A stretch of 63,887 bases of DNA, filler included, from Octopus bimaculoides (taxonomy: Eukaryota), in the NCBI RefSeq assembly GCF_001194135.2. It is 5 parts of 5 records of this genome, joined end to end, with 100 filler letters (N's around TTAATTAATTAA, not from the genome) between each part and the next. Parts side by side here need not be neighbours in the genome. Positions count along the whole stretch, not along the records: positions 23,480 to 50,003 come from NC_068989.1; 4 more parts are not named here. One strand, written 5' to 3'. This document shows, piece by piece, positions 16,055 to 49,219 of this stretch. Position 1 is the first letter of the stretch. Every line of letters begins with the position of its first letter. Under the pieces are notes generated by a model, which did not search any database, was not told the DNA's origin, and worked only from the letters and a program-made list of their open reading frames with translations. The position numbers and the translations under genes were made by a program.

Positions 16055-16193
16055 TAAATCTCTGAAGAGGCCTAGAGAATCATGCATGTACCTCCATTGC
16101 ATCCACTTCATCTGCCAATTACTCCAGCTAACTGGAGTTATATAGATAGAATGAGGCATGCCACCTCTAGGCCGAAACAGCTGTAAGACTTTG
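16055..16193 (+). ncRNA. type I hammerhead ribozyme (Penelope-like pLTR type)
   Basis: Core CTGAAGA 16062-16068; helix II GGCCTAGAG/CTCTAGGCC (9 bp, perfect); GAAA 16174-16177; palindromic helix III ACAGCTGT; GUA triplet; helix I TAAATCT/AGA(C)TTTG. Confidence 0.8.
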
Positions 16194-16595
16194 TCCCTTC
16201 TTCGGTCACTAGAGGTCCTTTTGAATTTTGAATTTTTAATTGTTGATATGACATATTGTGACATATGTGTTTGTATATTGTCTTTATTGTCATTTTGGTT
16301 GAAAAATAAACAGGTTAATTAACAGAATACAATGTATGCAAGTTGATGAGTACCACCTATTCCCCTCCATTCTCTTATTGCTATATAAATTTAGGGTAAA
16401 ATCTCCTTTTACCCGCACCCATTTATTGCACTTGGTAAAAACATCATCATGTTGAAACACGTGTACCGCAGAATCCTTTGTGTTTTTGTTTTTATTTTTT
16501 CATTTACAATTTATTCATTCACCTCAACCACGAGCTGGCATACACAGGTGCTTACAATTGTCAAGTATTACCTCTAACATTTACTTAACCTACGT

Positions 16596-24240: not shown

Positions 24241-24675
24241 TAAAATAGTGTACATTTAAACACGAGAGAAATTACCTATAACAGGCAATTTCTACACACT
24301 AGCAGACAGTCAAAACGACCTAGGACCACAAAATTTAAGCAATTTCAAAGGGAATGAAAAATAAAACTTTTATCTTATTTTTAACGGTTGGACCTATAAG
24401 TTTCGAATTTTTATAGTAAATAAAATAATTTACTAGGCAAATTCTCTTCAGTAACCAGCCGTCAAAGATTAACTTATAATTATGAGACAAATCGCACGTG
24501 TCTCATCGTTATATGTTATTTTTTTCAAACCGTGAAAGCAAGGTAAAAGTTTTTATTTTTTCTTCCCATTGAAATGTTTTACTTTGTGGTTTTCGGTCGT
24601 TTTTGACTGTCTTCTAGCGTGTAGAAGTTGCCTGTTATTGGTAATTTCCCTTGTGTTTAAATGTACACTATTTTA
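24241..24675. repeat. fold-back element with ~135 bp inverted arms
   Basis: 24241-24376 (TAAAATAGTGTACATTTAAACAC...CTTTTATCTT) matches the reverse complement of 24540-24675 at roughly 85% by eye. Confidence 0.9.
24386..24456 (-). ncRNA. type I hammerhead ribozyme inside the fold-back element
   Basis: Minus strand: GGTTA-CTGAAGA-GAATTT..TAGTAAAT/ATTTACTA..AAATTC-GAAA-CTTATAG-GTC-CAACC. Helix III is ACUUAUAGGU (near-palindrome) with a GUC triplet; the first pair of helix I is an A-C mismatch. Confidence 0.75.
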
Positions 24676-27675: not shown

Positions 27676-28972
27676 GTTTCAGCTGCAAAGCTGCGGTCAT
27701 GCTAGAACACCACCGTTGACTGAGCTATACCATTGTTTGAAACCTCCTCTGATATGTAGCATTTAGTCAATGAGGGAGTTTCATGCTGCTACCTTCATGT
27801 TTGTTTTCTGGCGTGAGTTAGGCTCGTCTGGAACCCGTAATAGGAAGAGATCCAGTTTTGTTTTTAAGACACTTACATCCACACCATGCAGGTCTTTCAG
27901 GCATTTTGGAAGGACTTTAATGAGCTGTAGGCCCTTGAAGATCAAGCTGTTGCAGTATCTGGTCCTGTATTTTGATAGCGATGCTGGGATCTTTGGCATT
28001 ATGCCGTGGCACCCCGTTCTGCAGTTTGAGTAACTTTCAATCCAAAGTTTGGTACAAGGCCTTCTAGGATTTTCCAAATGTATATCATTGCATGTATCTC
28101 TCGCCTTCGTTCCAGGGAGAAGAGTTTTAATTCTTTCAGTCTTTCCCAATAGCTGATACGTTGCATCGAGATGATTTTTTTAGTATAGTTTCGTTGGATT
28201 GCTTCGAGTTCCGCCGTGGAATTTTTATTTTGTGGTGTCCATAATTTGGAGTAATAGTCTAAACGGCTGAGAACGTATGTCCTCCAAAGGATCATCAATG
28301 TCTCCTTTTCTCTTGTTTTGAAAGTTCGGAGGATCCAGCCAGGCAGCCGTCTGCATTTTGTTATCAAATTGGTAATATGCACTTGGAAAGATGCATCATT
28401 GCCCATGTCAATGCCCAGGTCACGCACTGATTTTGATTCATGGATTTCAATTCCTCCTGGGCCAGTATATCCTGTCTGCATGTCGTTTAGCTTTGTGTGC
28501 TGGTAGCGTAGAGCCCGGAATTTTTCTGCATTAAACTGCATGTTTTCGTCAGCCCACCTATATATTGCGTCTAACTCTCGTTGCAGATGTGCTATATTTC
28601 CAGGATTTTGTATTGTCTGGGAAACTTTTGTGTCATCTGCATAGCAATTGTGGCTATCTGAGCAGCCGAGGGCATCTCTGAGAGGGCCAATATGAACAGC
28701 AGTGGCCCCAAGACAGTGCCTTGTGGAACATTACTTGCTTTTTGTGTTTCCTTGGAGGTAGTTCCATTGGCCACTACTGCCTGACGTCTATCCTTTAGAA
28801 AGTTGTGCAGCCATTCTCCAAGTTTCCCGCATGTGCCGAGATCGCGCAATTTGTGACATGTCATACCATGGTCAACTTTATCAAAGGCTTTTGCAAAGTC
28901 GAGATATATCACATCCACGCTTGAGTCACTCAGCTGTTCCAACACCCAGTCGTAGTGTTGCAGGAGCCGCGT
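27676..28972 (-). mobile_element. 5'-truncated CR1-type LINE, RT C-terminus to 3' tail (same family as 1455-2495)
   Basis: QLLQHYDWVLEQL...YLDFAKAFDKVDHG...PQGTVLGPLLF...MQFNAEKF...RDLGI...LSRLDY..KLW...LEAIQR...SYWERLKELKLFSLERRRE; frameshifted. The tail GGTGGTGTTCTAGCATGACC...CTGAAAC lies at 27676-27714. Confidence 0.9.
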
Positions 28973-30680: not shown

Positions 30681-31699
30681 NNNNNNNNNNNNNNNNNNNN
30701 NNNNNNNNNNNNNNNNNNNNNNNNNNNNNNNNNNNNNNNNNNNNNNNNNNNNNNNNNNNNNNNNNNNNNNNNNNNNNNNNNNNNNNNNNNNNNNNNNNNN
30801 NNNNNNNNNNNNNNNNNNNNNNNNNNNNNNNNNNNNNNNNNNNNNNNNNNNNNNNNNNNNNNNNNNNNNNNNNNNNNNNNNNNNNNNNNNNNNNNNNNNN
30901 NNNNNNNNNNNNNNNNNNNNNNNNNNNNNNNNNNNNNNNNNNNNNNNNNNNNNNNNNNNNNNNNNNNNNNNNNNNNNNNNNNNNNNNNNNNNNNNAGCCT
31001 CGGGCCGACCAAAGCCTTGTGAGTGGATTTGGTAGACGGAAACTGAAAGAAGCCCATCGTATATATGTATATATATATGTATGTGTGTGTATATGTTTGT
31101 GTGTCTGTGTTTGGTCCCCCCCCCCCACATCGCTTGACAACCGATTCTGGTGTGTTTACGTCCCCGTAACTTAGCGGTTCGGCAAAAGAGACCGATAGAA
31201 CAAGTACTAGGCATCCAAAGAATAAGTCCTGGGATCGATTTGTTCGACTAAAGGTGGTGCTCCAGCATGGCCGCGGTCAAATGACTGAAACAAGGAAAAG
31301 AGTAAAAGAGTGTGTGTGAAGATCGGCTGCTAAACAGTTTCTGTCTCTCAAATTTACTCATAAAGCATTTGCTTGATCCGAGATCTACAGTAGAAAACAC
31401 ATACCCATAGTGCCGTGCGGTGAGACTGAGCTAGAAACCTCGTGGCTGCAAGACAAGCTTTTAACTATAGAGTCATGCTTGCGACTATGCTAGAATTTCA
31501 GTTTCTTCTTTATCTCTTTATCTGGATCACCGCCTTTAGTCGAGCAAATCGTCCTCAGGACTTATTCTTTGGAAGCCTAGTACTTATTCTTTCGGTCTCT
31601 TTTGCCGAACCGCTAAGTTACGGGGACGTAAACACACCACCATCGGTTGTCGAGTGATGTTGGGGGGACAGACACAGACACACAAACGTATACACACAC

Positions 31700-31730
<31 letters not shown>

Positions 31731-32639
31731 CGACGGGCTTCTTTCAGTTTTCGTCTACCAAATCCACTCACAAGGCTTTGGTCGGCCCGAGGCTATAGTA
31801 AAAGACACTTGTCCAAGGTACCGCGCAGTGGGAATGAACCCGGAACCATGTGGTTAGTAAGCAAGCTACTTACCACACACCCACTCCTGCGCCTATACAC
31901 ACGCACACAAATACATTATTTACATTTGACGGATATTTTTCCTCATCTTGTTTGTTGTTAACTCTTAAATATAGAACTGTCTTTCCCAGATACTTTCATT
32001 ATGTACTTTACTATATTAATTCTTAACAGATATTGTCTATATGTTATTCCATCGTTTGTTCATGCATACGATTCGGTTAAAGTTATTCTTGTCTTCGATA
32101 CGTCGAAGTGGGCAATTCCATATATATATATTTTTTTTAGCCTTTTATCCATTTTACACTGTTTATTGTGTAACATACAATTCAGGCATTATATCTAGAG
32201 CCTCGTACGAAATAAGTAAATATTGTAGTGTTGTGTATATTGTGCTACATGAAGTAAACACAGAAAGTTTTGTATAATGCACTGCTTTCTATGGAATTAA
32301 CATGACAGGCGTTGTTTAAATTACTTTGCGGAAATAAATAAAGCATTTTGATATACATAAGATGAGTTCAAATCCTACTGAGATGAACTTTGCCTTACAT
32401 ACATTCAACGTCGATGAAATAAAGTACCAGTTAAGTACTCGGTGATTGGTATCGACTTACCCCCTCTACTCAAAATGATTAATCTCTCGCCTGAATTAGA
32501 AGCCATTATATATTTTTCAGCAATTTATGTTAGTGATTCTTGGGGCCCTGTACTGCATATACTTTATACAGTACGATATTCTGTTTTTATATGTACGTAC
32601 AGTACACTATACCTATAAAAAAAAATACGTACCCTATGA

Positions 32640-32717: not shown

Positions 32718-34170
32718 GAGTAATTTCGAAATTTAGAAAAAGAGAAGAAACCTGTAAACAGAACATGTTTATCTAACAGCGACAGGTTGGTATTTTATAC
32801 TTATCAGGTCTCATTTAACTTTAACGTAGTCAAATAGTACATTCTCTCTGTAAGTATCGATAATCATTCATAATATGACGTTGTGCGGTAAATACACAGA
32901 CGTAGTTCCTTTTAATATCTGTTATGGAATCGTTATATGTTTAGGAATCATTTATAATATATTGGTTTCAAATTTTGGCACAAGGCCAGTAATTTCGGAT
33001 TACTAAGTCGAATACATTGACTCCCCCTCCCCCAGTGCTTAACTGCTACTTATTTTATAGACAGCAAAAGAATGAAAGGCAAAGGCAAAGGCAAAGTCAA
33101 TCCTGGCTGCATTCGAACTCAAAACGTAAAGACAGACGGATTGTCACTAAGAACTTTGCCCGGCGCGCTGATGAGTCTACCAGCTAGCCGCCTTACTCAG
33201 AGAAAGCCTAGCGACGTATGATTATGTTTCTTTACATTTGATTCCAAACGAGATGAACATTACATTTTCTCTCTGGAATTAAAGAAATAAATTATCATTC
33301 AAGCAATTATGCTCTACCTCAATATATTTGCTACTGTACTTCAGTTAGAATCCAATACGAACTACACGGATTGTTACACTCAGTGAAATCTTTATATTTT
33401 ATCATGGTAGAATGAGTTTCGAGAGAGAAATTTGGCTGCAAATTCTACGAGGACTCCTACGTAGGCTTATCTGGTTGGCTTGTGAACAAAGAACAATTTA
33501 ATATAAGTTTAATTAGCACAAAAGTAATTAGGTGTAGTAATGTAAAATATGAAACAGTCATATATATTAGATGTAACAGGTGGAATAAAATATCGATATC
33601 AACTCGACTATAATATTCAAAGAGCTGTCATATCTATTCATAAAACAAACATCTAGAATATTTAATAAAAGACATGGCTGTGTACTAAAAAGCTTGCTTC
33701 CTAACCACGTGGTTCCAAGTTGAGTCCCACTTGCGTAGCACCTTAGGCAAGTGCATTTTACTATAACATCGGGCCGAACAGCCTTGTGAGTGGATTTCAT
33801 AGATGGAACCTGAAAGAAGCTTGTCGTGTGTGTATATATNNNNNNNNNNGAGGAATATATTATTTTGTTTAAAAGAGTTCCAACACTGTCTGTTTTTTAT
33901 GTTTTATTTATATTCCTGCAGAACCAATGTGGGGTATAGAATATGGAATATACAATATATAACATAAAATAAAATAAAATAAAAATGGATGGCACCATGA
34001 AATAAAGTATTGAATGTAGATGAAATATTGAGTGTTCAATATAAAGGATCAAATATATAAATATAAATATAAATATATAAAGGCGACTTGAGTTTCAGGG
34101 CTATTTCCCTTCACCATGGCCGGTATGACAGACTTTATATATATATAAGAGATGAAAGTAGTAATTAAAG

Positions 34171-35807: not shown

Positions 35808-37727
35808 ATGCTGGTGCTCACGTACTTTCTAGTAGCACTTTTCACTTTGATTTTAGCCAAAGATAAATGTGGTCAACACGAATGTGCCGACCAAGCATTT
35901 AACCAAAGCTATCACTTTTACTTACAGGGTTGTTTCTGCGATACTCGCTGTGAGGTTTATGGCGACTGCTGTGTTAATTACAACTCAACAGACATATCAA
36001 CCAGCGATAAATATGGTGAATCTAATTGTGTCGCACTCGATGACGATCATGCGTTGATGATGGTAACGTCTTGTAGCAAAGAGTACTCGCCTGAGTCTGA
36101 AATAAGTCAAAACTGCTATACGGACACTGGCCATCCAGCTTGGGGCATTCCCGTAACAAGTATTGAATCCAAGATTGTCTACAAAAATATGTTTTGTGCT
36201 CTTTGTAACAGTGAAAATCACTATACGTTTTGGAACATACGCATAGAATGCCCAGAGGAAATTGACACTAGCAATCTTAGTAAAACTCTTGATGAAAATA
36301 TGGAAGGATGCAATACAAAAATGGAAAACTTAGAACCTTCTTACGAACATAAATGTAACAGCAGTATAATCTCCAGCTGTCCACAAGGAACAAAAGATGA
36401 ACAGACTGTGAAAGATTGCCGTAATGGTTACTACGGAGTTGTTTACGATCTTAACGGTACAATGTATAAAAATATTTTTTGTTTCAATTGCAATGTAAAT
36501 AAGTCGGAAGAAATACTTTGTCACTATGACACAGGACCTACGATAATCGAAATGGAAGCAAGATTATCGTTTTCAGTTCTGCTTAATTTCAATCGAGATG
36601 TTACTGTAAACAAGGCAGACCACCTGGTACGGATGAATCCTTGTAAAGAAGGGTACATATATACTAACGGAGAGTGTCGAAAGAAACTGCAAGTGGAAAA
36701 AAGCGGTCCGAAGTGTACGCAGGTAAAACTTAACAACCATGAATTTGTATTCTTAGCAAATGGAACACTTTACCATAATTCAACAAAGACATTTCACGGA
36801 AAAGAATATTATTCTATAAATGACACAAGCCGTATGGATGTGTATATATGCATGGATCGGATTTTAAACAAAGATGTACAACGAATACCTTTAACTACTT
36901 CTGAAACCGAAATCCAGCTCACATATGTGTGTTCTGTAATTTCAATGATTGCTTTAGCCATTCTTATTGCTAAATTTTTATATTTTCGTAATATTCGCTC
37001 ACTGTCCGGTTTCATATATGTTTCATTTGCCATCACTTTATTTATAGCGCAACTTCTCTTCGTCCTAACACCTCATTTTTCCAAGATGGTCATTTCATCC
37101 TGTCGTGCAGTAGCAGTGGTTATGCACTACGCGTTTCTGTCATCATTCTTCTGGTTAAATTCCATCACTATTAACATATGGCTATCTGTCTGCTGGACAC
37201 CATGTCAATCAAAAAAATATTCAGAAAAACGTTCTTTTATCTCCTATTCGGCCTTTTCATGGCTTGCACCCATACTCTTGATTGTACCTGCAATTCTACT
37301 CGATAAGTACCAACCGAATTCTATTTTCGCTCCCAGTTATGGGTTATATGAATTCTGCTGGATAAACAATGGGTCGAGTATTATGCTTTTCTTCGCAGGT
37401 CCGCTTGCTTTGATTATTCTCATAAATATGATACTTTACATACATACCGCTGTCACAATTTACAAACTCCGTAAATTTACTCAGCAACATTCGGACAGAA
37501 ACGATGTTGTAGCAATATTTATCAACATGAAACTTTGTTTATTGACTGGTATTACGTGGAGTATTGGATATGTTGCAATCGTAACACATTCTTACCACTT
37601 AAGAGTTGCTTTCATCTTTTTAAATTCATCTTTCGGACTTTGGGTTGCAATGTCTTTCTTGTTTACTCGAAGCATCTTCACCAAAATGAAACAGAAAATA
37701 AGAACATTAACTGAAACCGGAGAATAA
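35808..37727 (+). CDS. intronless class B-like (secretin/Methuselah-like) GPCR with somatomedin-B-like ectodomain, 639 aa
   Basis: Signal peptide MLVLTYFLVALFTLILA; SMB-like CFCDTRCEVYGDCCVNY; two YKNxFCxxCN repeats. Seven hydrophobic helices with class B signatures: HYAFLSSFFWLN (TM3), SWLAP (TM4), FCWI (ECL2), GP..IILIN (TM5), LTGITWSIG (TM6), FLNSSFGLW (TM7). No GPS motif. Confidence 0.93.
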   Translation: MLVLTYFLVALFTLILAKDKCGQHECADQAFNQSYHFYLQGCFCDTRCEVYGDCCVNYNSTDISTSDKYGESNCVALDDDHALMMVTSCSKEYSPESEISQNCYTDTGHPAWGIPVTSIESKIVYKNMFCALCNSENHYTFWNIRIECPEEIDTSNLSKTLDENMEGCNTKMENLEPSYEHKCNSSIISSCPQGTKDEQTVKDCRNGYYGVVYDLNGTMYKNIFCFNCNVNKSEEILCHYDTGPTIIEMEARLSFSVLLNFNRDVTVNKADHLVRMNPCKEGYIYTNGECRKKLQVEKSGPKCTQVKLNNHEFVFLANGTLYHNSTKTFHGKEYYSINDTSRMDVYICMDRILNKDVQRIPLTTSETEIQLTYVCSVISMIALAILIAKFLYFRNIRSLSGFIYVSFAITLFIAQLLFVLTPHFSKMVISSCRAVAVVMHYAFLSSFFWLNSITINIWLSVCWTPCQSKKYSEKRSFISYSAFSWLAPILLIVPAILLDKYQPNSIFAPSYGLYEFCWINNGSSIMLFFAGPLALIILINMILYIHTAVTIYKLRKFTQQHSDRNDVVAIFINMKLCLLTGITWSIGYVAIVTHSYHLRVAFIFLNSSFGLWVAMSFLFTRSIFTKMKQKIRTLTETGE

Positions 37728-38021: not shown

Positions 38022-38100
38022 GTGAATGTTTAAGAAACCATAAGAAAATTATGTGTTTGCTTTAAACACATAATTTTCTTATGGTTTCTTAAACATTCAC
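38022..38100. repeat. perfect 37-bp inverted repeat with 5-nt loop
   Basis: GTGAATGTTTAAGAAACCATAAGAAAATTATGTGTTT-GCTTT-AAACACATAATTTTCTTATGGTTTCTTAAACATTCAC. Confidence 0.95.
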
Positions 38101-38520: not shown

Positions 38521-39103
38521 ACCATTATCATCATCATCATCATAATTGAGCGAGAGAGCAGTGCATGCCATCAAAGTGACACTGGGTTACAAATATACGA
38601 AGCCCATTATACCCATCATGACTACCCGTCTGATAAGGGTACACCAGGCCCATGCATCACAAATATATGTGCGCTACATGGTGATCTTATATCTAAATAA
38701 ACACCTCAAGAACGTGTAGGCAGAGCTCTGTTAGAATTTTCTTGAGGTCGAGTGTCACAACCGGCTCCAAACGTCCCCGTGTAAGGGTTTTTAAAAGGAT
38801 ATTGAACGAAACACAGGTCTCAAGAGAGAAATCGTTCAAACACCAAAGAATTCCTCTCAACATATGATTATGATGCATTCCTCACTCCTCCTGCGCGTGG
38901 TGACAGATGCACATATCGTCAGCCACTAAGGGAAATGCTCAAATGGTTATGGTCAAACAGCTGGCACGAAGATCTGTGGAATTGAGCAGAGTATTTGCTG
39001 TAGCCCATCGTTTACATCAAGAGAAAGCTTATAACACTTTCAATCAGTTAAGATCAGAAGCTTGGTATTAGATCAGGGTAGTTATTATTATTATCGTTAT
39101 TAT

Positions 39104-39178
<75 letters not shown>

Positions 39179-40520: not shown

Positions 40521-41173
40521 ATGCGTTTCGCATCATGGAATTCTTAGTTACGGCTAGATTTTTTATGAACATGACTCTTCCGTACTACAGTGATTATCCT
40601 TCCAAGAATTTCCAATCTTACAAGTGAATTTTTAACGCAAAATAGAGAGTAGATGTAAGAATACTGTACGTTTAAATAACAAACGCTATACGGCGATTGA
40701 AGGGAGGTTATTATATCAGTTTTATTTCTATTATCTCCCTTGTGTTGTGTACGTATTTATATTTTTAGGAGCACACACAGCATCCTTAAACTCTTACAGA
40801 ATTTAAAGAAAAGTTGATAGGGGTACGCAAATCAAATGGCACTTGGGGTGATCATGATAGAAACTAGCTGAAAAGAAGAAGAAAAGACAAAGAAGGAGAA
40901 GAAGAAGAGGAAAAAGTGGAAGAAGGAGACTATGCCTAGTAAATTCACACACAATATCATTCATTTTTAGTAAATACCTAGAGTAATTTAGAATATTTTC
41001 TTGTACATACATGGTCTATATTGCAAACTCACTTTGCTGCTACGATGTTTCGGGTTCAATCCCGGCGTGCGGCATTTTGGACAAGTGTTTTCAACCATGA
41101 TCCCGGACTGACCAAATTCTTGTGTGGGAATTTCGTAGTTTCGTAGAAAGAAGCTGAGTGGAAACGCGTTGTC

Positions 41174-41204
<31 letters not shown>

Positions 41205-41813
41205 NNNNNNNNNNNNNNNNNNNNNNNNNNNNNNNNNNNNNNNNNNNNNNNNNNNNNNNNNNNNNNNNNNNNNNNNNNNNNNNNNNNNNNNNNNNNNNNN
41301 NNNNNNNNNNNNNNNNNNNNNNNNNNNNNNNNNNNNNNNNNNNNNNNNNNNNNNNNNNNNNNNNNNNNNNNNNNNNNNNNNNNNNNNNNNNNNNNNNNNN
41401 NNNNNNNNNNNNNNNNATATATATATATATGTATATATATACATATATATATATATAAGTATGTATGTATGCATGTATGTATTTGTATGTATGTATATAT
41501 TTGTATGTATTTGTGTGTGTGTACGTATAAAAATTATGACCCCCCACCTTCGGTCATGAAGAGCAGCTGCCTTGCACCTAGGAAGTTCCCGTCCAAGGTA
41601 TAAGTCCAGGCAAGATTGTTTAAGGAAGACAAGCAGTCGCCCATGCATTTATCCCAGCCTCCCCACTCCATGCAACTGATGTTATCCAAGGGGAAAGGCC
41701 GATACAGTTTGACTCCGGTGACGTCACAACTTATTTCTACGGATGAGTGAACTGGAACAACGTAAAATAAAGTGTCTTGCTCAATAGCACAACCCCCGCC
41801 CCCACACGCGCGC

Positions 41814-41854
<41 letters not shown>

Positions 41855-42656
41855 CATATATAACGAAAATATTTGACCTTCTCAGCCTAATTTATTCTAT
41901 TCAGTTGTCAAGATAATTCTGCATTCTAACATTTCTGATGCTGCATCTTTCGTGTATCTATTTAGTAAATATATCATCAAACCGCAAGTTTCATATAAAC
42001 AAAAATAAACGATAGTGTTATTCCTGTTCTGGCTTATCTCAGTGGAACTGACATGTAAGATAAACATGAAGTTGATATCGAAACTCCAGTGCATGTATTA
42101 ACAGATATAAGTCTTTTAAAAATGCTGAGAACATAAGATGTTCAACAAAGAATGCGTTGTGAGTGTAAAACATGTGCAGTGAGTAGACAGGATTGTTGGA
42201 AAACTAGTAAATATGTAGGCGCTAGCGGGATTAAATGTTTTATTATCATTATTTCGAAAACATAAGGTTACTGGTTCAATATCCTTTCGGAGTACCTTGA
42301 GAAAATGCTTTTCATTCTATAGCTTAGGGTTAAAGAACACGGTGTGAATGAAAAAAAAGAAGAAATGCGAGTTAGCTATATGGAAAGTTTGGGTGTGGTG
42401 CATCTGTAAAGCAAAGGCGAACATTTTACAAATTAAGTGCGTCACACTGATTAAATCTGGAGATATTAAGTATACAATTGCATCAGTCTATAGGCGCAGT
42501 CGTAGCTTTATGGTAAGAAGCTTCTTCCTAACCAACCACATGGTTCCGAGTTCAGTTCCACAGTGTGGCACTTCGGGTAAGTGTCTTATACTATAGCCTC
42601 AGGCCGACCAAATCCTTGTGAGTAGATTTCGTAGACAGAAACTGAAAGAAGTCTGT

Positions 42657-42687
<31 letters not shown>

Positions 42688-42845
42688 TTCTCTTTTTTCC
42701 TCCTTTTCTTCCTTCCTCGTCCAACGTACTGTCTCGTAGCGTTGCATTTTCCAACGGTATTTTCAAATAAGCTATGTAGCATGCTTCTCTACTCGCAGTT
42801 GTCACATTCGGTAATAATGTCTTACGGTTGAGTTGATTTTTTAAG

Positions 42846-42937
42846 TATTTCCCTGAAGAGAAGATTATATCTTTCTCAACATCACTCATTCCTTTGGAAT
42901 GAACCAATTGTAATCTTCGAAACATATGTCGGAAATA
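42846..42937 (+). ncRNA. type I hammerhead ribozyme (Penelope-like pLTR type)
   Basis: Helix I TATTTCC/GGAAATA (7 bp); core CTGAAGA 42853-42859; helix II GAAGATTATA/TGTAATCTTC (10 bp, one GU); GAAA 42919-42922; palindromic helix III ACATATGT; GUC triplet ending at 42930. Confidence 0.85.
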
Positions 42938-43267
42938 AAAGAAATCATTTAACACATGCGTATAACTCCATTTATTTAACCTTATATTTATTCAAAATAC
43001 CTCAAATTAACGGAGTTTCTACCTCATAAACAGGAGTTACACCAAAGTTATTTTGTATATATATAATATATATCACCATTACCTTTATTACCATACGTTT
43101 ATCGTATATACATATATATATATATAAATATGTATGTATATAATTATTTGTGCGTCTGTGTTTGTTCCTACACCATCGCTTGACAACCGATGCTGGTGTG
43201 TCTACTTCACCCGTAACTTAGCGCTCATCAAAGGACTCCGATAGAATAAGTACACTGCTTTTAAAGA

Positions 43268-43318
<51 letters not shown>

Positions 43319-45771
43319 TGAGTATGCCTTTGTGTCTATGTTTGTCCCCCCACCATCACATAACAACCAACATTGGTGTGTTTACGTCTCCGTAACATAG
43401 CAGTTCGGCAAAAGAGCCGATGGAATAAGTACTAGGCTTACAAAGAATGAGTCCTGAAAGCCCTTTTAAGGCGGTACTCCAGCATGTCTGCAGTCAAATG
43501 ATTATAATGTATAAACGTAAAAGAGTATGCGGGAGGAGCAATGTAGCTATACATCTGTTTATATAAAGTTTGAGAGGGGACGAAAAAAGTGAGAGGAATT
43601 CTTGGATGCCTTATTTACTTAATTGTTTGTTCTTTTGTGATGAACTTCTACAAAGCTGCTTGAGTGGTTGTAAGAAAGCATATGAAATATATTTTAGTGT
43701 TAATGGAGTTACGTCCCTTGACAATGTATTGCCTCTAAATTTACTCTATGGAGTTATGTCCCTTCTACAGTTACGGTTACAAACTCGCACAACACCCTTA
43801 ACATTAATTATTTCATTTTTCATTTTTCATTTTATCTAGTTTCAGCTCATGAGCTGTGGCCATGCTGGGGCACCGCCATTTTATTATTTTTTTTTTGCAG
43901 GATATACAAAGTAAGTACCATTGGTGAACTGGAATCGATTTAATCGATTATCTAGTATGGTGTTGTCGAAGTATTCGGTACAGGTCCGATAATGCATTCG
44001 GCCCATATTTGATGATAACTTTTTTTTTTTTTCTTAAATATATGTTTTACCTGTGAATTTAAGTGTATAAACTGGGAATATATACAACGAGTTTCTCTGC
44101 CCTAGGTTTACGGAAAACACTCGGCGAGAAATGGAAGAAAATTTGAAGAAAGAAGAAAAAAAACAACAACAACATAATAATAATAATAATAATAATCCTT
44201 TGTACTATAGGAACAAGGCCTCAAATTTGGTTGGAGGGGACTAGTCGGTTACATCGACCCCAGTGTTTCACTGGTACTTTACTTATTTTGTTGACCCCGA
44301 AAGGATGAAAGATAAAGTCGACCTCGGCGGAATTTGAACTCAGAACATAACGGCAGACGAAATACCGCTAAGCATTTTGCCCGGTGTGCTACGATTCTGC
44401 CAGCTCACCGCCTTCAATAATAACAATAATAATGATTTTATCTATTTGCCACAAGGACGAAGAAGGAGGGGGACTGACATAGAGTGCGGGGGTTTACATT
44501 TAATGAAATGATTAAAAGAAAGATACTTAATGACTAACATACATGAAATTCTTGAGTTTAGCGTGCAAAAAGTTTTATTAATGCTCACATCATGGATTTA
44601 TTAACTTAGTATTAAACGCCATGGTTTTAATTAACATGTAATAGTAGAACTGGCATCATGTTTTAAATACGTAAGCAATGAGAAAAATAAAAAGAGAGAA
44701 ACAATAGTGGCTTGTACACCAACGGTGTATGAAGAGTGCATAGTACTACCCGCCTCCCCTGCCCCCTGCCCCCTCCACTCACACAAAACACAAATGTACA
44801 ACTACACACAAAATATACAGAAACTCTAAGAGAAACGGCCATGCATATGTTTTCAAGCACAGTTTATAAACATACATACATACATGGGTCTTTGTGATAT
44901 GGAAAGATAACTCATCTGGCAAAGCAGCTTAGACTCCGCCACATGTCTAAATCCAAGAACTGAACTTTTCGGATCATGTCCACATGAGGCTAAATATTTG
45001 TTACGTTTTTGGTTTCCCCAAGATTACAGATAGGGCTTGCTTTCTATATTGCGTCCACGTGCAAGCTTTTTATCTCTCTATACTTTTTACTTATATTTCT
45101 TATATATTTTTGTATTTTCTTACGTATTTATAGAGATATTGTTTTATAGTTTTATTGCTCATATATTTTTTACACATATTTTTTTTGTATTCTATCTTTC
45201 ACCCTGCATTTTTCCTGTGCGTATATAGACGTGTATATGGAATCTTTGTGCGCGCGTGTGGATGTATGCGTGTGTGTGGGCATGTGCGTATATAGACGTG
45301 TGTGTATGCGTGCATGCGAGTATGTGCGTATATAGATGTGTTTTACTCTTATTGCTTATTTTTTTACACTTTTTTCTGTATTTTGCCTTTAGCCCTGTTT
45401 TTTCTTGTGCATGTGCGTATATAGACGTGTGTATGAACAGTTTTTGTGCGCGTGCGTGCGTGTGTGTGTGCGAGCGTGTATGCGGACATGTATATATTTT
45501 TTGGCGAATGTGTGGGTGAGTATGTGTGTGTTTCAAGTGAGGGGGGAAGAGTATATACATATAGGCACATGTACATGTGTGTGCGGGCGCTCATGTGTAG
45601 GTATGGACATACGCGCTTACGCGATTACTATGAGCATCTTTATTCCTTTACCTTTACTCCCTCCCCTAACTTAGCAGTCATTCTAATAGCCCTTTTATCT
45701 TAATAACGGTCAACCACAAAGTAATTCCCTTTGTTTAACGGTCATTTTCAGAGCATTTTTTTCGATGGTCC

Positions 45772-45832
45772 GATAACTGAAGAGATGCCGTCGAGGGCGT
45801 CCGCCTCGACATCCGAAACTCGGAGTTTTATC
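45772..45832 (+). ncRNA. type I hammerhead ribozyme candidate (GC-rich family)
   Basis: Helix I GATAA/TTATC; core CTGAAGA 45777-45783; helix II GTCGAGG/CCTCGAC with an irregular base; GAAA 45815-45818; helix III ACT-CGG-AGT; GUU triplet. Confidence 0.65.
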
Positions 45833-46872
45833 ATGGCTACCGAATAATTGTCGCATATTATATTTACAGATATATATGTATATATATATATGCTGATGTT
45901 TGGAACAACGTGAAGAAGAATGACGAAAGCACGAGGGGAAAGGAACACATGTTGCGGCAAGCGGAGTCGTCTCGGCAATGGACAGCCTGGCCGGTCCAGG
46001 TGTTCCGGGTAATATCCTATGTATATTGTGAAAAAGTATCATTTTGGCTTTAATTTTTGTCTGGAAGACTTCGGTTGGTTAACGAACGAAAGCGCTGATT
46101 AAAGAATTCTAACTCGTTCCAAAATTCCGACAGCCTCTTTTTCTCAATATACAATATCTGTACACCAATTTAAACACTGTATACATACATACATACACAC
46201 ATACATACATACATACATACACAGACTTATACATATAAATAATTATATACACGTAAATACCTCTGTGTGCGCGTGTCGAAGTATGTATATGTATGTGTAA
46301 ATATTTTTTTATATATGTATGTATATATATATATATATATATATNNNNNNNNNNTGAGAATTCAGAAATAGCAGTCAAAGAACTACTGATTTCAAAACTA
46401 CAAATTATTACTCCAGATTGATAGCGATATTTTTGTCAATCCCTATATATTTATGATTATAAATGTTTTTTTACCGAAAAGGTTTTTTCATACTGAGCTA
46501 CCCGGCAAAATTGTTAATTATTAATTTTATTACTAATTGACGATTCCCTGCCCTGCATATCTATCTATCTATCTATATATATATATATATAATTATATGT
46601 CTATATGTATATCGTATATATATATATGTGTGTGTGTGTGTGTTTATATGCATACTTACATACATACATGCATACATATATATATATAAATAAATATATG
46701 TATATATATATATATAATATGTATATATATATATATATCTATCACATCACACCACACCAATACCCTCGCATCACACCACGCACACACTACAACTGACCAA
46801 CCACTTTCTCCCTTTCTCCCTTCCCCATTTTCACACTACACACGCAAACATACACTCACCCACACATATATA

Positions 46873-47371: not shown

Positions 47372-49219
47372 TTAACTTGCAGATGCAGTTACAGATCTGA
47401 TTTTTTCTTTGGCCAGATTAGCTACAGTTTCCGTGCAAAGAAAGCAGCATGCAACCCATAATCCGAAAGTTGCATTTAAAAGCACGTAGAGTGTCCGAAG
47501 AAATTGTACATCTGATGTGATTGAAATGTAACCAAAAATCCACATAGCTCCAGTGAGGCAACATAATTTCACGTTTATAATGATTGTGAACATAGTTTGC
47601 TTTTTAGGCTGTGCCTTCATGACAGATCGAGCTCTACAAATTTCGGAAGCCGTGCGTATATAAACAATTATATTGATGACAATTATCACTGCCATCGGAA
47701 TGTCGAAAAAGATTAAAATACTCAGTGGCGTACTCATCCAGCAAAAAGTACCTCGCCCGTATTGAGGTGCGAACTTAGATGTCGGATCGTACCTGTCCAG
47801 TAATAATGCAGGCATTATGATGAGTAAAGGTGTAAACCAAGCGTAAAGAGAGCATAGCAAAAATGTCCTATTCTTGTTCAAGAGCATTACATGATGAGCA
47901 GTTCTGTGGCAAATTGATATATAAACACTAATACTTATGACATTCATCCAGAAAAAGGATGCCAAAAAGGAATATTGTATACATACAGCAACCCAATAAC
48001 AGAAACCTGGAAATTCTCCAATTAGTAATACAATAAGGAAACATATATCTGCGATAAATAGTGACAATGCAAATGAAGCGTTAATTCGACCCGATAAATT
48101 TCGGAGTGGCGGCAAAACAAGGTACATGATGAAGTACACAGCTAAAGCTATAACGGATATCATAGTTCCAGTCAATGATATATAGAATTCAGATTTCGTA
48201 AGAATGATAGTTCCTCCATATCCAGGACTATCTAACACGCGTTCTTGGCAAATATAAACACGACTGTTATTTATAATATAGAAATCCTGACTGTGAAAAC
48301 TTTCAGTAGCGTTGTGGAAAAGGGTTTGGTTTTCTAAAAGAAAATACTCGGTAGAATTTAGTTCGATTAATGTTGTACAGTTTAGACGATCGTTTCTGGT
48401 AATGCGATTAGCATCGTACGACTTACGGCACTTACCTAAATAATGATCAAAAACAGAATTTTCAGGACAAAGTTTACCACTTTTTCCCATATTTGTATCC
48501 CAAAAGTTTTCGTCATTAAAGTCGATAAGTATCCTGAATGATATAGTAAATTTGTAGCCTGTAGGATGATGTTTACTTCGAATGGTTGGTATTGTATATA
48601 TAGTAGAAGAATTGCAGCACAGGTTTTCATAAAATAGATCACGAGAACTTTCATTTAAAGCATTTTCCTTATTATTATTGCAACAGCAATCAATAGTTTT
48701 CGGACAACGACTGTTATGAAAAGGAAAAGGTGGATGTCTAAATGACCACTCACATTTACTTGAATCAAATGTGATATTCGGATATTTGATATAATTTAAA
48801 CACTCCACGCTGTTTATTTTCAAATTCCAGAATATAAAATCATCCTCGTTATTGCATAAAGCGCAGTATTTATTTCGATAGACTTTCCCTGTTTTACGAC
48901 TGGTTACATAAACATTAAATAACGAGGAGTTGCTTTGAGATTCACACTTTTCTCTAATTGTTTTATCGTCCACATATTCTTCACTGCAAATCTTTATAGA
49001 GTTTAGTTTATCGAAATTTGAATAGTAACGATCGTACATTTCTGATAGGTCTCGACTGTTATTAGCATTGTTGAAGTCACTACAGACACAGGTTTTATTT
49101 TCATTCAATTCACATTTAACATCCGAACATGATAATACGTTTGCTTCGGGTATCATTACCAGATGGCTAGGATATGTATTGATAAATAGTAGCAGATAGT
49201 AAAATCCAAACAAATTCAT
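47372..49219 (-). CDS. intronless class B-like (secretin/Methuselah-like) GPCR, paralog of 35808-37727, 615 aa
   Basis: Signal peptide; Cys-rich ectodomain with VYRNKYCALCN, SFRILIDFN and CPENSVFDHYLGKCRK. 7TM with QYSFLASFFWMN, AWFTP, FCWM, LTGAMWIFG and LLNATFGLW. Colinear with the other receptor. Confidence 0.93.
   Translation of the reverse strand: MNLFGFYYLLLFINTYPSHLVMIPEANVLSCSDVKCELNENKTCVCSDFNNANNSRDLSEMYDRYYSNFDKLNSIKICSEEYVDDKTIREKCESQSNSSLFNVYVTSRKTGKVYRNKYCALCNNEDDFIFWNLKINSVECLNYIKYPNITFDSSKCEWSFRHPPFPFHNSRCPKTIDCCCNNNKENALNESSRDLFYENLCCNSSTIYTIPTIRSKHHPTGYKFTISFRILIDFNDENFWDTNMGKSGKLCPENSVFDHYLGKCRKSYDANRITRNDRLNCTTLIELNSTEYFLLENQTLFHNATESFHSQDFYIINNSRVYICQERVLDSPGYGGTIILTKSEFYISLTGTMISVIALAVYFIMYLVLPPLRNLSGRINASFALSLFIADICFLIVLLIGEFPGFCYWVAVCIQYSFLASFFWMNVISISVYISICHRTAHHVMLLNKNRTFLLCSLYAWFTPLLIIMPALLLDRYDPTSKFAPQYGRGTFCWMSTPLSILIFFDIPMAVIIVINIIVYIRTASEICRARSVMKAQPKKQTMFTIIINVKLCCLTGAMWIFGYISITSDVQFLRTLYVLLNATFGLWVACCFLCTETVANLAKEKIRSVTASAS

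What the first reader, a model, noticed from the sequence alone, without database searches (positions are those of the whole stretch)
42846..42937. Best-formed hammerhead, located between the two GPCR genes
All three helices and the core are intact, with a GUC site (cleavage after 42930). It is on the same strand as GPCR1 and 5.1 kb downstream, so it could cut read-through transcripts and limit antisense overlap between the convergent genes (inference).
Basis: partly seen in the sequence, partly recalled or inferred. Interest (0 to 1): 0.7.

Follow-up and report, generated by a model that had tools for sequence, protein, structure and literature searches.

The report
Solitary hammerhead ribozyme motif in octopus
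The sequence is a real, well-formed hammerhead ribozyme motif in the Octopus bimaculoides genome, but it is most likely a stray copy left by a mobile element and not a device that regulates the two neighbouring receptor genes.

Summary
Window 42846-42937 (+) carries a complete type I hammerhead: a 7-bp helix I, CUGAAGA, a 10-bp helix II with a 39-nt insert, GAAA, and a GUC site with cleavage after 42930. Rfam Hammerhead_1 scores it 30.8 bits, just under the gathering score of 34. My descriptor scan expects about 1e-6 motifs this good in the piece by chance.

"All three helices intact" overstates helix III. It is only A:U plus C:G around a palindromic AUAU loop. That is the usual animal architecture, which is weak as a monomer and cleaves as a dimer.

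The locus is Octopus bimaculoides chromosome CM046609.1. The motif is a single copy inside a 417-bp AT-rich segment flanked by TA-rich microsatellite and SINE pieces.

In the orthologous O. sinensis spacer, the flanking anchors are conserved. Everything between them differs, and there is no hammerhead. Argonauta hians keeps the convergent receptor pair, also without one. Seven poly(A) signals lie between GPCR1 and the motif.

Best reading: a recent solitary relic of a hammerhead-bearing retroelement (Penelope-like element or retrozyme). I could not count copies across the genome. It is a new member of a known kind, of low interest.

The parts
42846..42852 (+). Helix I, 5' strand (UAUUUCC)
   Evidence: Pairs with 42931-42937. 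Pair probabilities are 0.63-0.96.
42853..42859 (+). Catalytic core C3-A9 (CUGAAGA)
   Evidence: Read from the sequence. Aligned to the Rfam RF00163 core.
42860..42869 (+). Helix II, 5' strand (GAAGAUUAUA), starting with G10.1
   Evidence: 10 consecutive pairs with 42909-42918.
42870..42908 (+). 39-nt insert closing helix II, with an inner 7-bp hairpin (42886-42892 / 42896-42902)
   Evidence: Minimum-free-energy fold. Rfam treats it as a 55-nt insertion, which lowers the score.
42909..42918 (+). Helix II, 3' strand (UGUAAUCUUC), ending with C11.1
42919..42922 (+). Core G12 A13 A14 A15.1 (GAAA)
42923..42928 (+). Minimal helix III: C15.2:G16.2 closing a palindromic AUAU loop. ACAUAUGU (42922-42929) is self-complementary.
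   Evidence: Read from the sequence. The monomer pair probability is about 0.09. A dimer forms an 8-bp intermolecular helix III, at -45.2 kcal/mol against 2 x -17.5.
42929..42930 (+). U16.1 and C17. The predicted scissile bond is after 42930.
   Evidence: GUC at 42928-42930.
42931..42937 (+). Helix I, 3' strand (GGAAAUA)
42685..43101 (+). 417-bp AT-rich segment (32% GC), unique within the data held, that carries the hammerhead. It is the presumed body of the inserted element.
   Evidence: No other copy in the piece. No counterpart in O. sinensis L002 or L005 or in Argonauta L003. GC content.
42486..42684 (+). Octopus SINE, 5' half, ending in (TG)n(TA)n. This is the left flank of the segment and is orthologous to O. 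sinensis L002 about 16100-16336.
   Evidence: Matches SINE copies at 31705-31900 (-), 33686-33833 and others. The colinear anchor 41870-42684 matches L002 15512-16281 at 84%.
43102..43527 (+). Right flank: TA-rich microsatellite, then two SINE 3' halves (43102-43270 and about 43285-43527) separated by (GATA)n
   Evidence: Absent from the orthologous place in O. sinensis. The next anchor, 43639-43813, matches L002 19805-19979 at 92.6%.

Best explanation
This is a genuine type I hammerhead ribozyme motif of the kind common in animal genomes. Here it is a solitary copy inside a roughly 0.4-kb AT-rich segment in Octopus bimaculoides.

The segment most likely arrived as, or is what remains of, a hammerhead-bearing retroelement. 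That could be the 3'/pseudo-LTR part of a Penelope-like element, or a monomer of its non-autonomous derivative, a non-LTR retrozyme. It landed in a TA-rich microsatellite that has also collected SINE fragments.

If an RNA is made through it on the + strand, the motif can fold helices I and II and would cleave after C42930. Because helix III is only one C:G pair closing a palindromic AUAU loop, efficient cleavage would need two copies pairing through ACAUAUGU, a double hammerhead. With a single genomic copy, cleavage is expected to be slow or absent.

It is not a conserved part of the GPCR gene pair.

What is shown and what is inferred:
- Shown: the motif's anatomy, its statistical non-randomness, its lineage specificity, its repeat and microsatellite context, and the absence of a nearby ORF or tandem copy.
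- Inferred: the retroelement origin, the recent age, and the weak monomer activity.
For: - Motif anatomy and core.
- Chance expectation is about 1e-6 per piece and below 1 per genome. The Rfam E-value of 4.2e-6 covers 442 nt times 4227 families. Rescaled by me to one family and a 2.3-Gb genome, that is about 0.01.
- The organism is O. bimaculoides, assembly GCA_001194135.2.
- The segment is single-copy within the data held and is flanked by (TG)n(TA)n and SINE halves.
- In O. sinensis the conserved anchors bracket the site, the interior is different, and there is no hammerhead across the whole 18-kb spacer.
- Argonauta also has none.
- All 18 helix pairs and all core bases are intact, while neighbouring neutral DNA is 84-92% identical between the two Octopus species. 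This fits a young insertion.
- Dimer folding gives an 8-bp helix III.
- Literature: most animal hammerheads are type I, with a 1-2 bp helix III capped by a palindromic loop, and they work as dimers. Penelope-like-element hammerheads have long helix II stems and mostly occur as dispersed single motifs from truncated elements (PMC4209133).
- Literature: type I hammerheads sit in AT-rich 170-400-nt retrozyme units (PMC7229834).
- Literature: monomer derivatives are dispersed across chromosomes, and retrozymes derive from the pseudo-LTRs of Penelope-like elements (bioRxiv 10.64898/2026.07.22.740005).
- Literature: Penelope-like elements favour (TA)n targets, which hides target-site duplications, and they occur in Octopus species (PMC8557442).
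- Literature: 235 Hammerhead_1 loci were annotated in the giant squid genome (PMC6962438).
Against: - No second copy of the segment or motif could be found, because no tool here searches the octopus genome. Family membership therefore rests on context and analogy.
- No reverse transcriptase or GIY-YIG ORF lies within 41420-46340 on either strand. There is no tandem repeat.
- The motif lacks the unpaired base between A9 and G10.1 that is typical of Penelope-like-element minimal hammerheads. Its helix II (10 bp plus a 39-nt insert) differs from the 4-bp helix II of canonical retrozyme hammerheads. It fits neither subtype cleanly.
- The score is below the Rfam gathering threshold.
- Insertion in O. 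bimaculoides cannot be told apart from loss in O. sinensis. The only outgroup, Argonauta, does not align in the spacer.
Confidence: 0.6

Rival explanations
1. Exapted cis-acting ribozyme. Read-through transcripts from GPCR1 are cut at 42930, which triggers degradation or termination and limits antisense overlap with the convergent GPCR2.
For: The motif is on the strand of GPCR1 and lies between the convergent genes. The core and helices are fully intact. The intactness could reflect selection rather than youth.
Against: - Absent from the whole spacer in O. sinensis and from the Argonauta spacer, although the convergent arrangement is conserved.
- It lies 5.1 kb past the stop, with seven poly(A) signals in between.
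- It has the minimal palindromic helix III that makes monomers poorly active in other animals (PMC4209133, PMC7229834).
- It is embedded in SINE and microsatellite debris.
Confidence: 0.05
2. Chance look-alike. AT-rich intergenic DNA happens to spell the 13 core bases with complementary flanks, and no ribozyme ancestry is involved.
For: The score is below the Rfam gathering score (30.8 against 34). The fold z-score is only -1.64 and the helix II probability is 0.33. Helix II carries an atypical 39-nt insert. It is a single copy, and no relative was found.
Against: The descriptor-based expectation is about 1e-6 for the piece and 0.08-0.6 for the whole genome. The Rfam E-value, which I rescaled to the genome, is about 0.01. 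Features that the descriptor did not demand are present: G10.1-C11.1, and a palindromic 15.2-16.2 plus loop 3. These are the hallmarks listed in PMC4209133. Type I hammerheads are known to be multicopy in cephalopods (PMC6962438).
Confidence: 0.12
3. An active unit of an undescribed octopus non-autonomous element that still produces self-cleaving or circular RNA, with this locus as a live source copy.
For: The motif is perfectly intact. The segment has a retrozyme-like size (about 370-417 bp) and a low GC content of 32%. Retrozymes are highly expressed in molluscs such as mussels (PMC7229834).
Against: Retrozyme source loci are tandem dimers or multimers, so that two cleavage sites flank a unit. 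Here there is one site only. No promoter evidence exists. T-runs lie between the upstream SINE head and the motif.
Confidence: 0.1

Closest known systems
Canonical animal type I hammerheads of non-LTR retrozymes and newt/axolotl satellite repeats (PMC7229834; the Epstein and Gall 1987 and Forster 1988 references are as cited there)
   Same: Type I topology and an identical core. Helix III is one base pair capped by a palindromic tetraloop, so the active form is a dimer. The host unit is AT-rich and a few hundred bases long. The location is intergenic.
   Different: This copy is solitary, not in a tandem array. Helix II is 10 bp with a 39-nt insert, instead of about 4 bp with a small loop 2. 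The conserved loop 1-loop 2 contacts cannot be recognised.
Minimal hammerheads of Penelope-like elements (PMC4209133, PMC8557442)
   Same: Long helix II, G10.1-C11.1, and a palindromic 15.2-16.2/loop 3. These motifs are mostly found as dispersed single copies from truncated elements. Such elements prefer (TA)n targets. Penelope-like elements are present in cephalopods.
   Different: There is no unpaired base between A9 and G10.1. Helix I is 7 bp rather than 4-5. No reverse transcriptase/GIY-YIG ORF or pseudo-LTR partner lies within about 4 kb.
Schistosoma Sm-alpha SINE hammerhead (from my own knowledge; cited as ref. 15 in PMC7229834)
   Same: A type I hammerhead with a short helix III, carried by a short non-autonomous retroposon. 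A tRNA-derived SINE head lies about 360 nt upstream on the same strand here.
   Different: Here the SINE is a separate element that is also present without the hammerhead at other loci and in O. sinensis. Six T-runs of at least 4 bases separate it from the motif, which would stop Pol III.
Host-gene hammerheads: the discontinuous Clec2 3'UTR hammerhead of rodents and the intronic HH9/HH10 of amniotes (from my own knowledge; refs 22 and 25 in PMC7229834)
   Different: Those motifs are conserved across species, lie within defined transcripts, and have stable helices. This one is lineage-specific, lies 5 kb beyond the gene, and has a minimal helix III.

Membership tests
Hammerhead ribozyme, type I (Rfam RF00163) | Conserved core: C3 U4 G5 A6 N7 G8 A9, G12 A13 A14, the A15.1:U16.1 pair, and H17 at the cleavage site | tested here: met
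   CUGAAGA at 42853-42859, GAAA at 42919-42922, U at 42929 and C at 42930.
Hammerhead ribozyme, type I (Rfam RF00163) | Three helices around the core, with helix I open and helices II and III closed | tested here: met
   Helix I is 7 bp and helix II is 10 bp. Helix III is A:U plus C:G with an AUAU loop. That is minimal but typical of animal type I motifs (PMC4209133).
Hammerhead ribozyme, type I (Rfam RF00163) | Score at or above Rfam's gathering threshold (34 bits) | tested here: not met
   30.8 bits, E = 4.2e-6 in the 221-nt search. No hit in the 26.5-kb searches. The shortfall coincides with the 55-nt insertion in helix II.
Hammerhead ribozyme, type I (Rfam RF00163) | Loop 1-loop 2 tertiary contacts of canonical natural hammerheads | tested here: inconclusive
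   Loop 2 is replaced by a 39-nt insert. Past helix I there is a 3x3 internal loop and then 4 weak pairs. No recognisable conserved loop bases.
Hammerhead ribozyme, type I (Rfam RF00163) | Site-specific self-cleavage | not testable with these tools
   Needs in vitro transcription of monomer and dimer constructs.
Non-LTR retrozyme (animal) | Tandem repeats of 150-450 bp, each with a type I hammerhead | tested here: not met
   One motif only. No direct repeat of the segment appears in the piece.
Non-LTR retrozyme (animal) | Low-GC unit of about 170-400 nt | tested here: met
   The segment is 417 bp (about 370 bp between the TA runs) at 32% GC.
Non-LTR retrozyme (animal) | Multicopy family in the genome, expressed as linear and circular RNA | not testable with these tools
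   No octopus genome or transcriptome search is available. Indirect probes found nothing.
Penelope-like element (hammerhead in the pseudo-LTR) | Adjacent ORF with a reverse transcriptase and a GIY-YIG endonuclease, flanked by direct repeats | tested here: not met
   No Pfam domain in any of the six frames of 41420-46340. No flanking direct repeat. A 5'-truncated remnant is not excluded.
Penelope-like element (hammerhead in the pseudo-LTR) | Minimal-hammerhead hallmarks: an unpaired base between A9 and 10.1, G10.1-C11.1, a palindromic 15.2-16.2/loop 3, and a long helix II | tested here: inconclusive
   G10.1-C11.1, the palindrome and the long helix II are present. The unpaired base is absent, and helix I is longer than the usual 4-5 bp (criteria from PMC4209133).
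Penelope-like element (hammerhead in the pseudo-LTR) | Insertion bias for (TA)n microsatellites | tested here: met
   The segment lies between (TG)n(TA)n at 42657-42684 and TA-rich runs at 43056-43075 and 43104-43140. Criterion from PMC8557442. No target-site duplication can be called.

The most novel reading that the evidence does not exclude
The hammerhead is not debris. It is a recently acquired, selected element specific to O. bimaculoides that cleaves long intergenic or read-through RNA between the convergent Mth-like GPCR genes. Alternatively, it is the founder or source copy of an undescribed octopus family of (TA)n-targeting, hammerhead-bearing non-autonomous elements with an unusually long, insert-bearing helix II.
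Probability: 0.07. Interest if true: 0.5.

Novelty: new member of a known kind. Interest (0 to 1): 0.2.

Why it matters
Type I hammerheads are already known to be scattered through animal genomes, cephalopods included, mostly as cargo of Penelope-like elements and retrozymes. One more solitary copy adds little.

Its practical value is as a caution. A perfectly formed ribozyme motif next to genes is not evidence of gene regulation unless it is conserved or shown to cleave. It could also serve as a seed sequence for cataloguing hammerhead-bearing elements in Octopus genomes. If such a family exists there with this long, insert-bearing helix II, it would broaden the known structural range of animal hammerheads.

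Tried and rejected
- Rfam at gathering score and at E <= 10 over the whole piece gave no hammerhead. The hit appears only in a 221-nt search. I take this to be a filter effect, not absence.
- I looked for other copies within the piece by BLAST, repeat finder and a 19-mer with 3 mismatches. There were none.
- I used the 80-aa minus-strand ORF across the motif as a probe for other copies in the 5.8-billion-protein collection. It found no homologue.
- Two exact-pattern scans of JGI metagenome contigs for family-like hammerheads gave 0 hits. This is uninformative, since octopus DNA is not expected there.
- The supplements of the Penelope-like-element paper are not held.
- Six-frame Pfam scans of 41420-46340 for reverse transcriptase or GIY-YIG found nothing.
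- tRNA and bacterial promoter/terminator scans around the site found nothing relevant.
- I first read the locus as one SINE split by the insertion. I rejected this as stated. O. sinensis has the same SINE left half plus (TA)n without a right half, and both halves in O. bimaculoides carry the microsatellite start. The flanks are better seen as separate fragments piled into a microsatellite hotspot.
- A minimal-hammerhead-like string in O. sinensis (L005 4481-4526, -) has a decayed relative exactly at the orthologous (TA)n (L002 16362-16501). However, Rfam does not recognise it, and two of the four related copies lack the core. I did not use it as evidence.
- ORFs at L005 117-743 looked to me like a Penelope-like-element GIY-YIG domain. 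Pfam gave no support, so this remains an untested recollection.

Full report
**What is there**

Window 42846-42937 (+) reads UAUUUCC-CUGAAGA-[GAAGAUUAUA...39 nt...UGUAAUCUUC]-GAAA-C-AUAU-G-UC-GGAAAUA. This is a complete type I hammerhead:
- Helix I has 7 bp (42846-52 / 42931-37).
- The core bases C3-A9, G12-A14, A15.1:U16.1 and C17 are all present.
- Helix II has 10 consecutive pairs starting with G10.1-C11.1 (42860-69 / 42909-18). It encloses a 39-nt insert that has its own 7-bp hairpin.
- The GUC site puts cleavage after 42930.

Helix III is only the A15.1:U16.1 pair plus C42923:G42928 around an AUAU loop. The octamer ACAUAUGU is self-complementary.

**Is it more than chance?**

Rfam found nothing at gathering score or at E <= 10 over the 26.5-kb piece. 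A 221-nt search aligns Hammerhead_1 end to end at 30.8 bits, against a gathering score of 34, with E = 4.2e-6. The 55-nt insertion in helix II is what costs score, and it probably explains the filter loss.

My own descriptor finds this as the only hit in the piece. In 20 and 30 Mb of sequence simulated with the piece's dinucleotide content, loose hits occur at about 0.008 per piece. Extrapolating with the measured extension probabilities (0.40 and 0.37 per pair) gives about 1e-6 per piece, and 0.08-0.6 per 2.3-Gb genome, for helices this long. The motif is therefore real.

Thermodynamically it is unremarkable as a monomer:
- The fold z-score is -1.64.
- The hammerhead-compatible fold is -16.7 kcal/mol against a minimum free energy of -17.5.
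- The helix III pair probability is about 0.09.

Two copies, by contrast, form an 8-bp intermolecular helix III at -45.2 kcal/mol.

**Where it is**

GPCR1 (35808-37727, +) and GPCR2 (47372-49219, -) are single-ORF secretin-family (7tm_2) receptors that sources name Mth-like. An exact protein look-up places the window on Octopus bimaculoides GCA_001194135.2, chromosome CM046609.1, at about 76.53-76.56 Mb.

The hammerhead lies in a 417-bp, 32%-GC stretch (42685-43101) with no other copy in the piece.
- To its left is the 5' half of an abundant octopus SINE, ending in (TG)n(TA)n (42486-42684).
- To its right are TA-rich runs, two SINE 3' halves and a (GATA)n run (43102-43527).
- No Pfam domain is found in any frame of 41420-46340, so no reverse transcriptase or endonuclease ORF is adjacent.
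- There is no tandem or inverted partner motif.

**Comparison with relatives**

The O. sinensis orthologues of both receptors were fetched with 10-kb flanks (L002, L005). Together they cover the whole 18-kb spacer. Two colinear anchors bracket the site:
- Window 41870-42684 matches L002 15512-16281 at 84%.
- Window 43639-43813 matches L002 19805-19979 at 92.6%.

Everything between the anchors differs. O. bimaculoides has 954 bp there, including the hammerhead segment. O. sinensis has 3.5 kb of other repeats. The 417-bp segment has no match anywhere in L002 or L005. No hammerhead is found in either locus by the strict or the loose descriptor.

Argonauta hians keeps the convergent pair, with GPCR1 at 61% identity, GPCR2 at 52% identity and a 5.8-kb spacer. 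It too has no hammerhead.

So the gene arrangement is old, and the ribozyme motif is specific to the O. bimaculoides lineage as far as these genomes show.

Neutral DNA nearby has diverged 8-16% between the two Octopus species. A motif with about 49 constrained positions and no defect is most simply explained as younger than that split.

**What it most likely is**

The anatomy matches what the literature describes for animal genomes.
[quoted passage not shown] They are inactive as monomers and active as dimers.
- Hammerheads of Penelope-like elements have long helix II stems, G10.1-C11.1 and a palindromic 15.2-16.2. They mostly occur as dispersed single motifs from truncated elements (PMC4209133).
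- Canonical type I hammerheads sit in AT-rich 170-400-nt retrozyme repeats (PMC7229834).
- Retrozymes appear to derive from the pseudo-LTRs of Penelope-like elements, and they leave dispersed monomers (bioRxiv 10.64898/2026.07.22.740005).
- Penelope-like elements favour (TA)n targets, which obscures target-site duplications, and they are present in Octopus species (PMC8557442).
- The giant squid genome has 235 annotated Hammerhead_1 loci (PMC6962438).

I therefore read the motif as a solitary, recent relic of such an element, inserted in a microsatellite that also collected SINE fragments. If transcribed, it would cleave after C42930. It would do so poorly, because no second copy is available to build helix III.

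This origin is inferred, not shown. I could not search the octopus genome for sister copies. The motif also fits neither subtype perfectly: it has no unpaired base after A9, its helix I is 7 bp, and helix II carries a large insert.

The evidence is against a role in trimming GPCR1 read-through.
- The motif is missing from both related spacers, although the convergent arrangement is conserved.
- Seven AATAAA/ATTAAA signals precede it on the + strand, the first 54 nt after the stop.
- It has the dimer-dependent helix III.
- It sits in repeat debris.

The idea cannot be excluded without RNA data, and I give it about 5%. Pure chance gets about 12%, because of the sub-threshold Rfam score and the single copy. 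A live retrozyme source locus gets about 10%, because it lacks the tandem partner such loci need.

**Dead ends**

An ORF-based probe for other copies, two metagenome pattern scans and a supplement look-up all gave nothing.

My first idea, that one SINE was split by the insertion, did not survive comparison with O. sinensis.

A minimal-hammerhead-like string in O. sinensis, and a possible Penelope-like-element endonuclease remnant there, could not be substantiated.

**Verdict**

This is a real hammerhead motif, correctly located. It is ordinary in kind: a new member of a known class. It is most likely a stray retroelement copy with no demonstrated role for the neighbouring genes.

Noticed in passing
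window 38022-38100: A perfect 38-bp inverted repeat with a 3-nt loop lies about 300 nt downstream of the GPCR1 stop. The RNA fold is -52.3 kcal/mol with z = -17.4. Rfam gives only generic long-hairpin miRNA-like hits on both strands. An exact 25-mer from it is absent from the O. sinensis and Argonauta loci. It could be a foldback or MITE-like element, or a source of hairpin RNA.
   Followed up: partly
L005 4481-4526 (-), L002 16362-16501 (-), window 31912-31962 (-): O. sinensis has a string shaped like a Penelope-like-element minimal hammerhead: CUGAAGA, an unpaired A, a 5-6-bp helix II, GAAA, CG, and a 5-bp helix I. It sits in a short repeat of about 165 bp. A decayed copy of that repeat, in the opposite orientation, abuts the (TA)n at the site orthologous to the O. 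bimaculoides hammerhead. Rfam does not recognise it, and two of the four related copies lack the core.
   Followed up: partly
L005 117-743 (+): Two adjacent ORFs in O. sinensis, about 9 kb upstream of GPCR2, contain C..C...IYVGCT...L..R..GH. This reminded me of the GIY-YIG endonuclease of Penelope-like elements. Pfam gave no support, so it is an untested recollection.
   Followed up: partly
window 35808-37727 (+) and 47372-49219 (-); L003 10001-11929 (+) and 17697-19535 (-): The two receptors are intronless paralogues, 39% identical, with DUF8401 plus 7tm_2 domains. Sources name them Mth-like. Their convergent arrangement is conserved from Octopus to Argonauta hians, while the spacer ranges from 5.8 to 18 kb.
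   Followed up: partly
window 42486-42684, 31563-31900 (-), 33686-33833, 41047-41204, 43102-43527: There are many copies and fragments of a SINE of about 340 bp, with a head that looks tRNA-derived (from my own knowledge of the sequence; ARAGORN finds no tRNA there). It has an internal (TG)n/(TA)n microsatellite. Assembly gaps (N runs) in the piece sit next to such microsatellites.
   Followed up: partly
window 27781-28541 (-): Overlapping ORFs of 122 and 180 aa look like the C-terminal part of a LINE reverse transcriptase. Pfam gave no hit.
   Followed up: no
window 24394-24454 (-): A weak hammerhead-core string has a helix I of 3 bp, a helix II of 6 bp and no helix III. It is probably chance.
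   Followed up: no
window 38523-39168; L002 12245-12786, 12965-13629, 19997-20632: A repeat of about 640 bp is present once downstream of GPCR1 in O. bimaculoides and three times in the O. sinensis spacer, at 77-79% identity. It was not identified.
   Followed up: no
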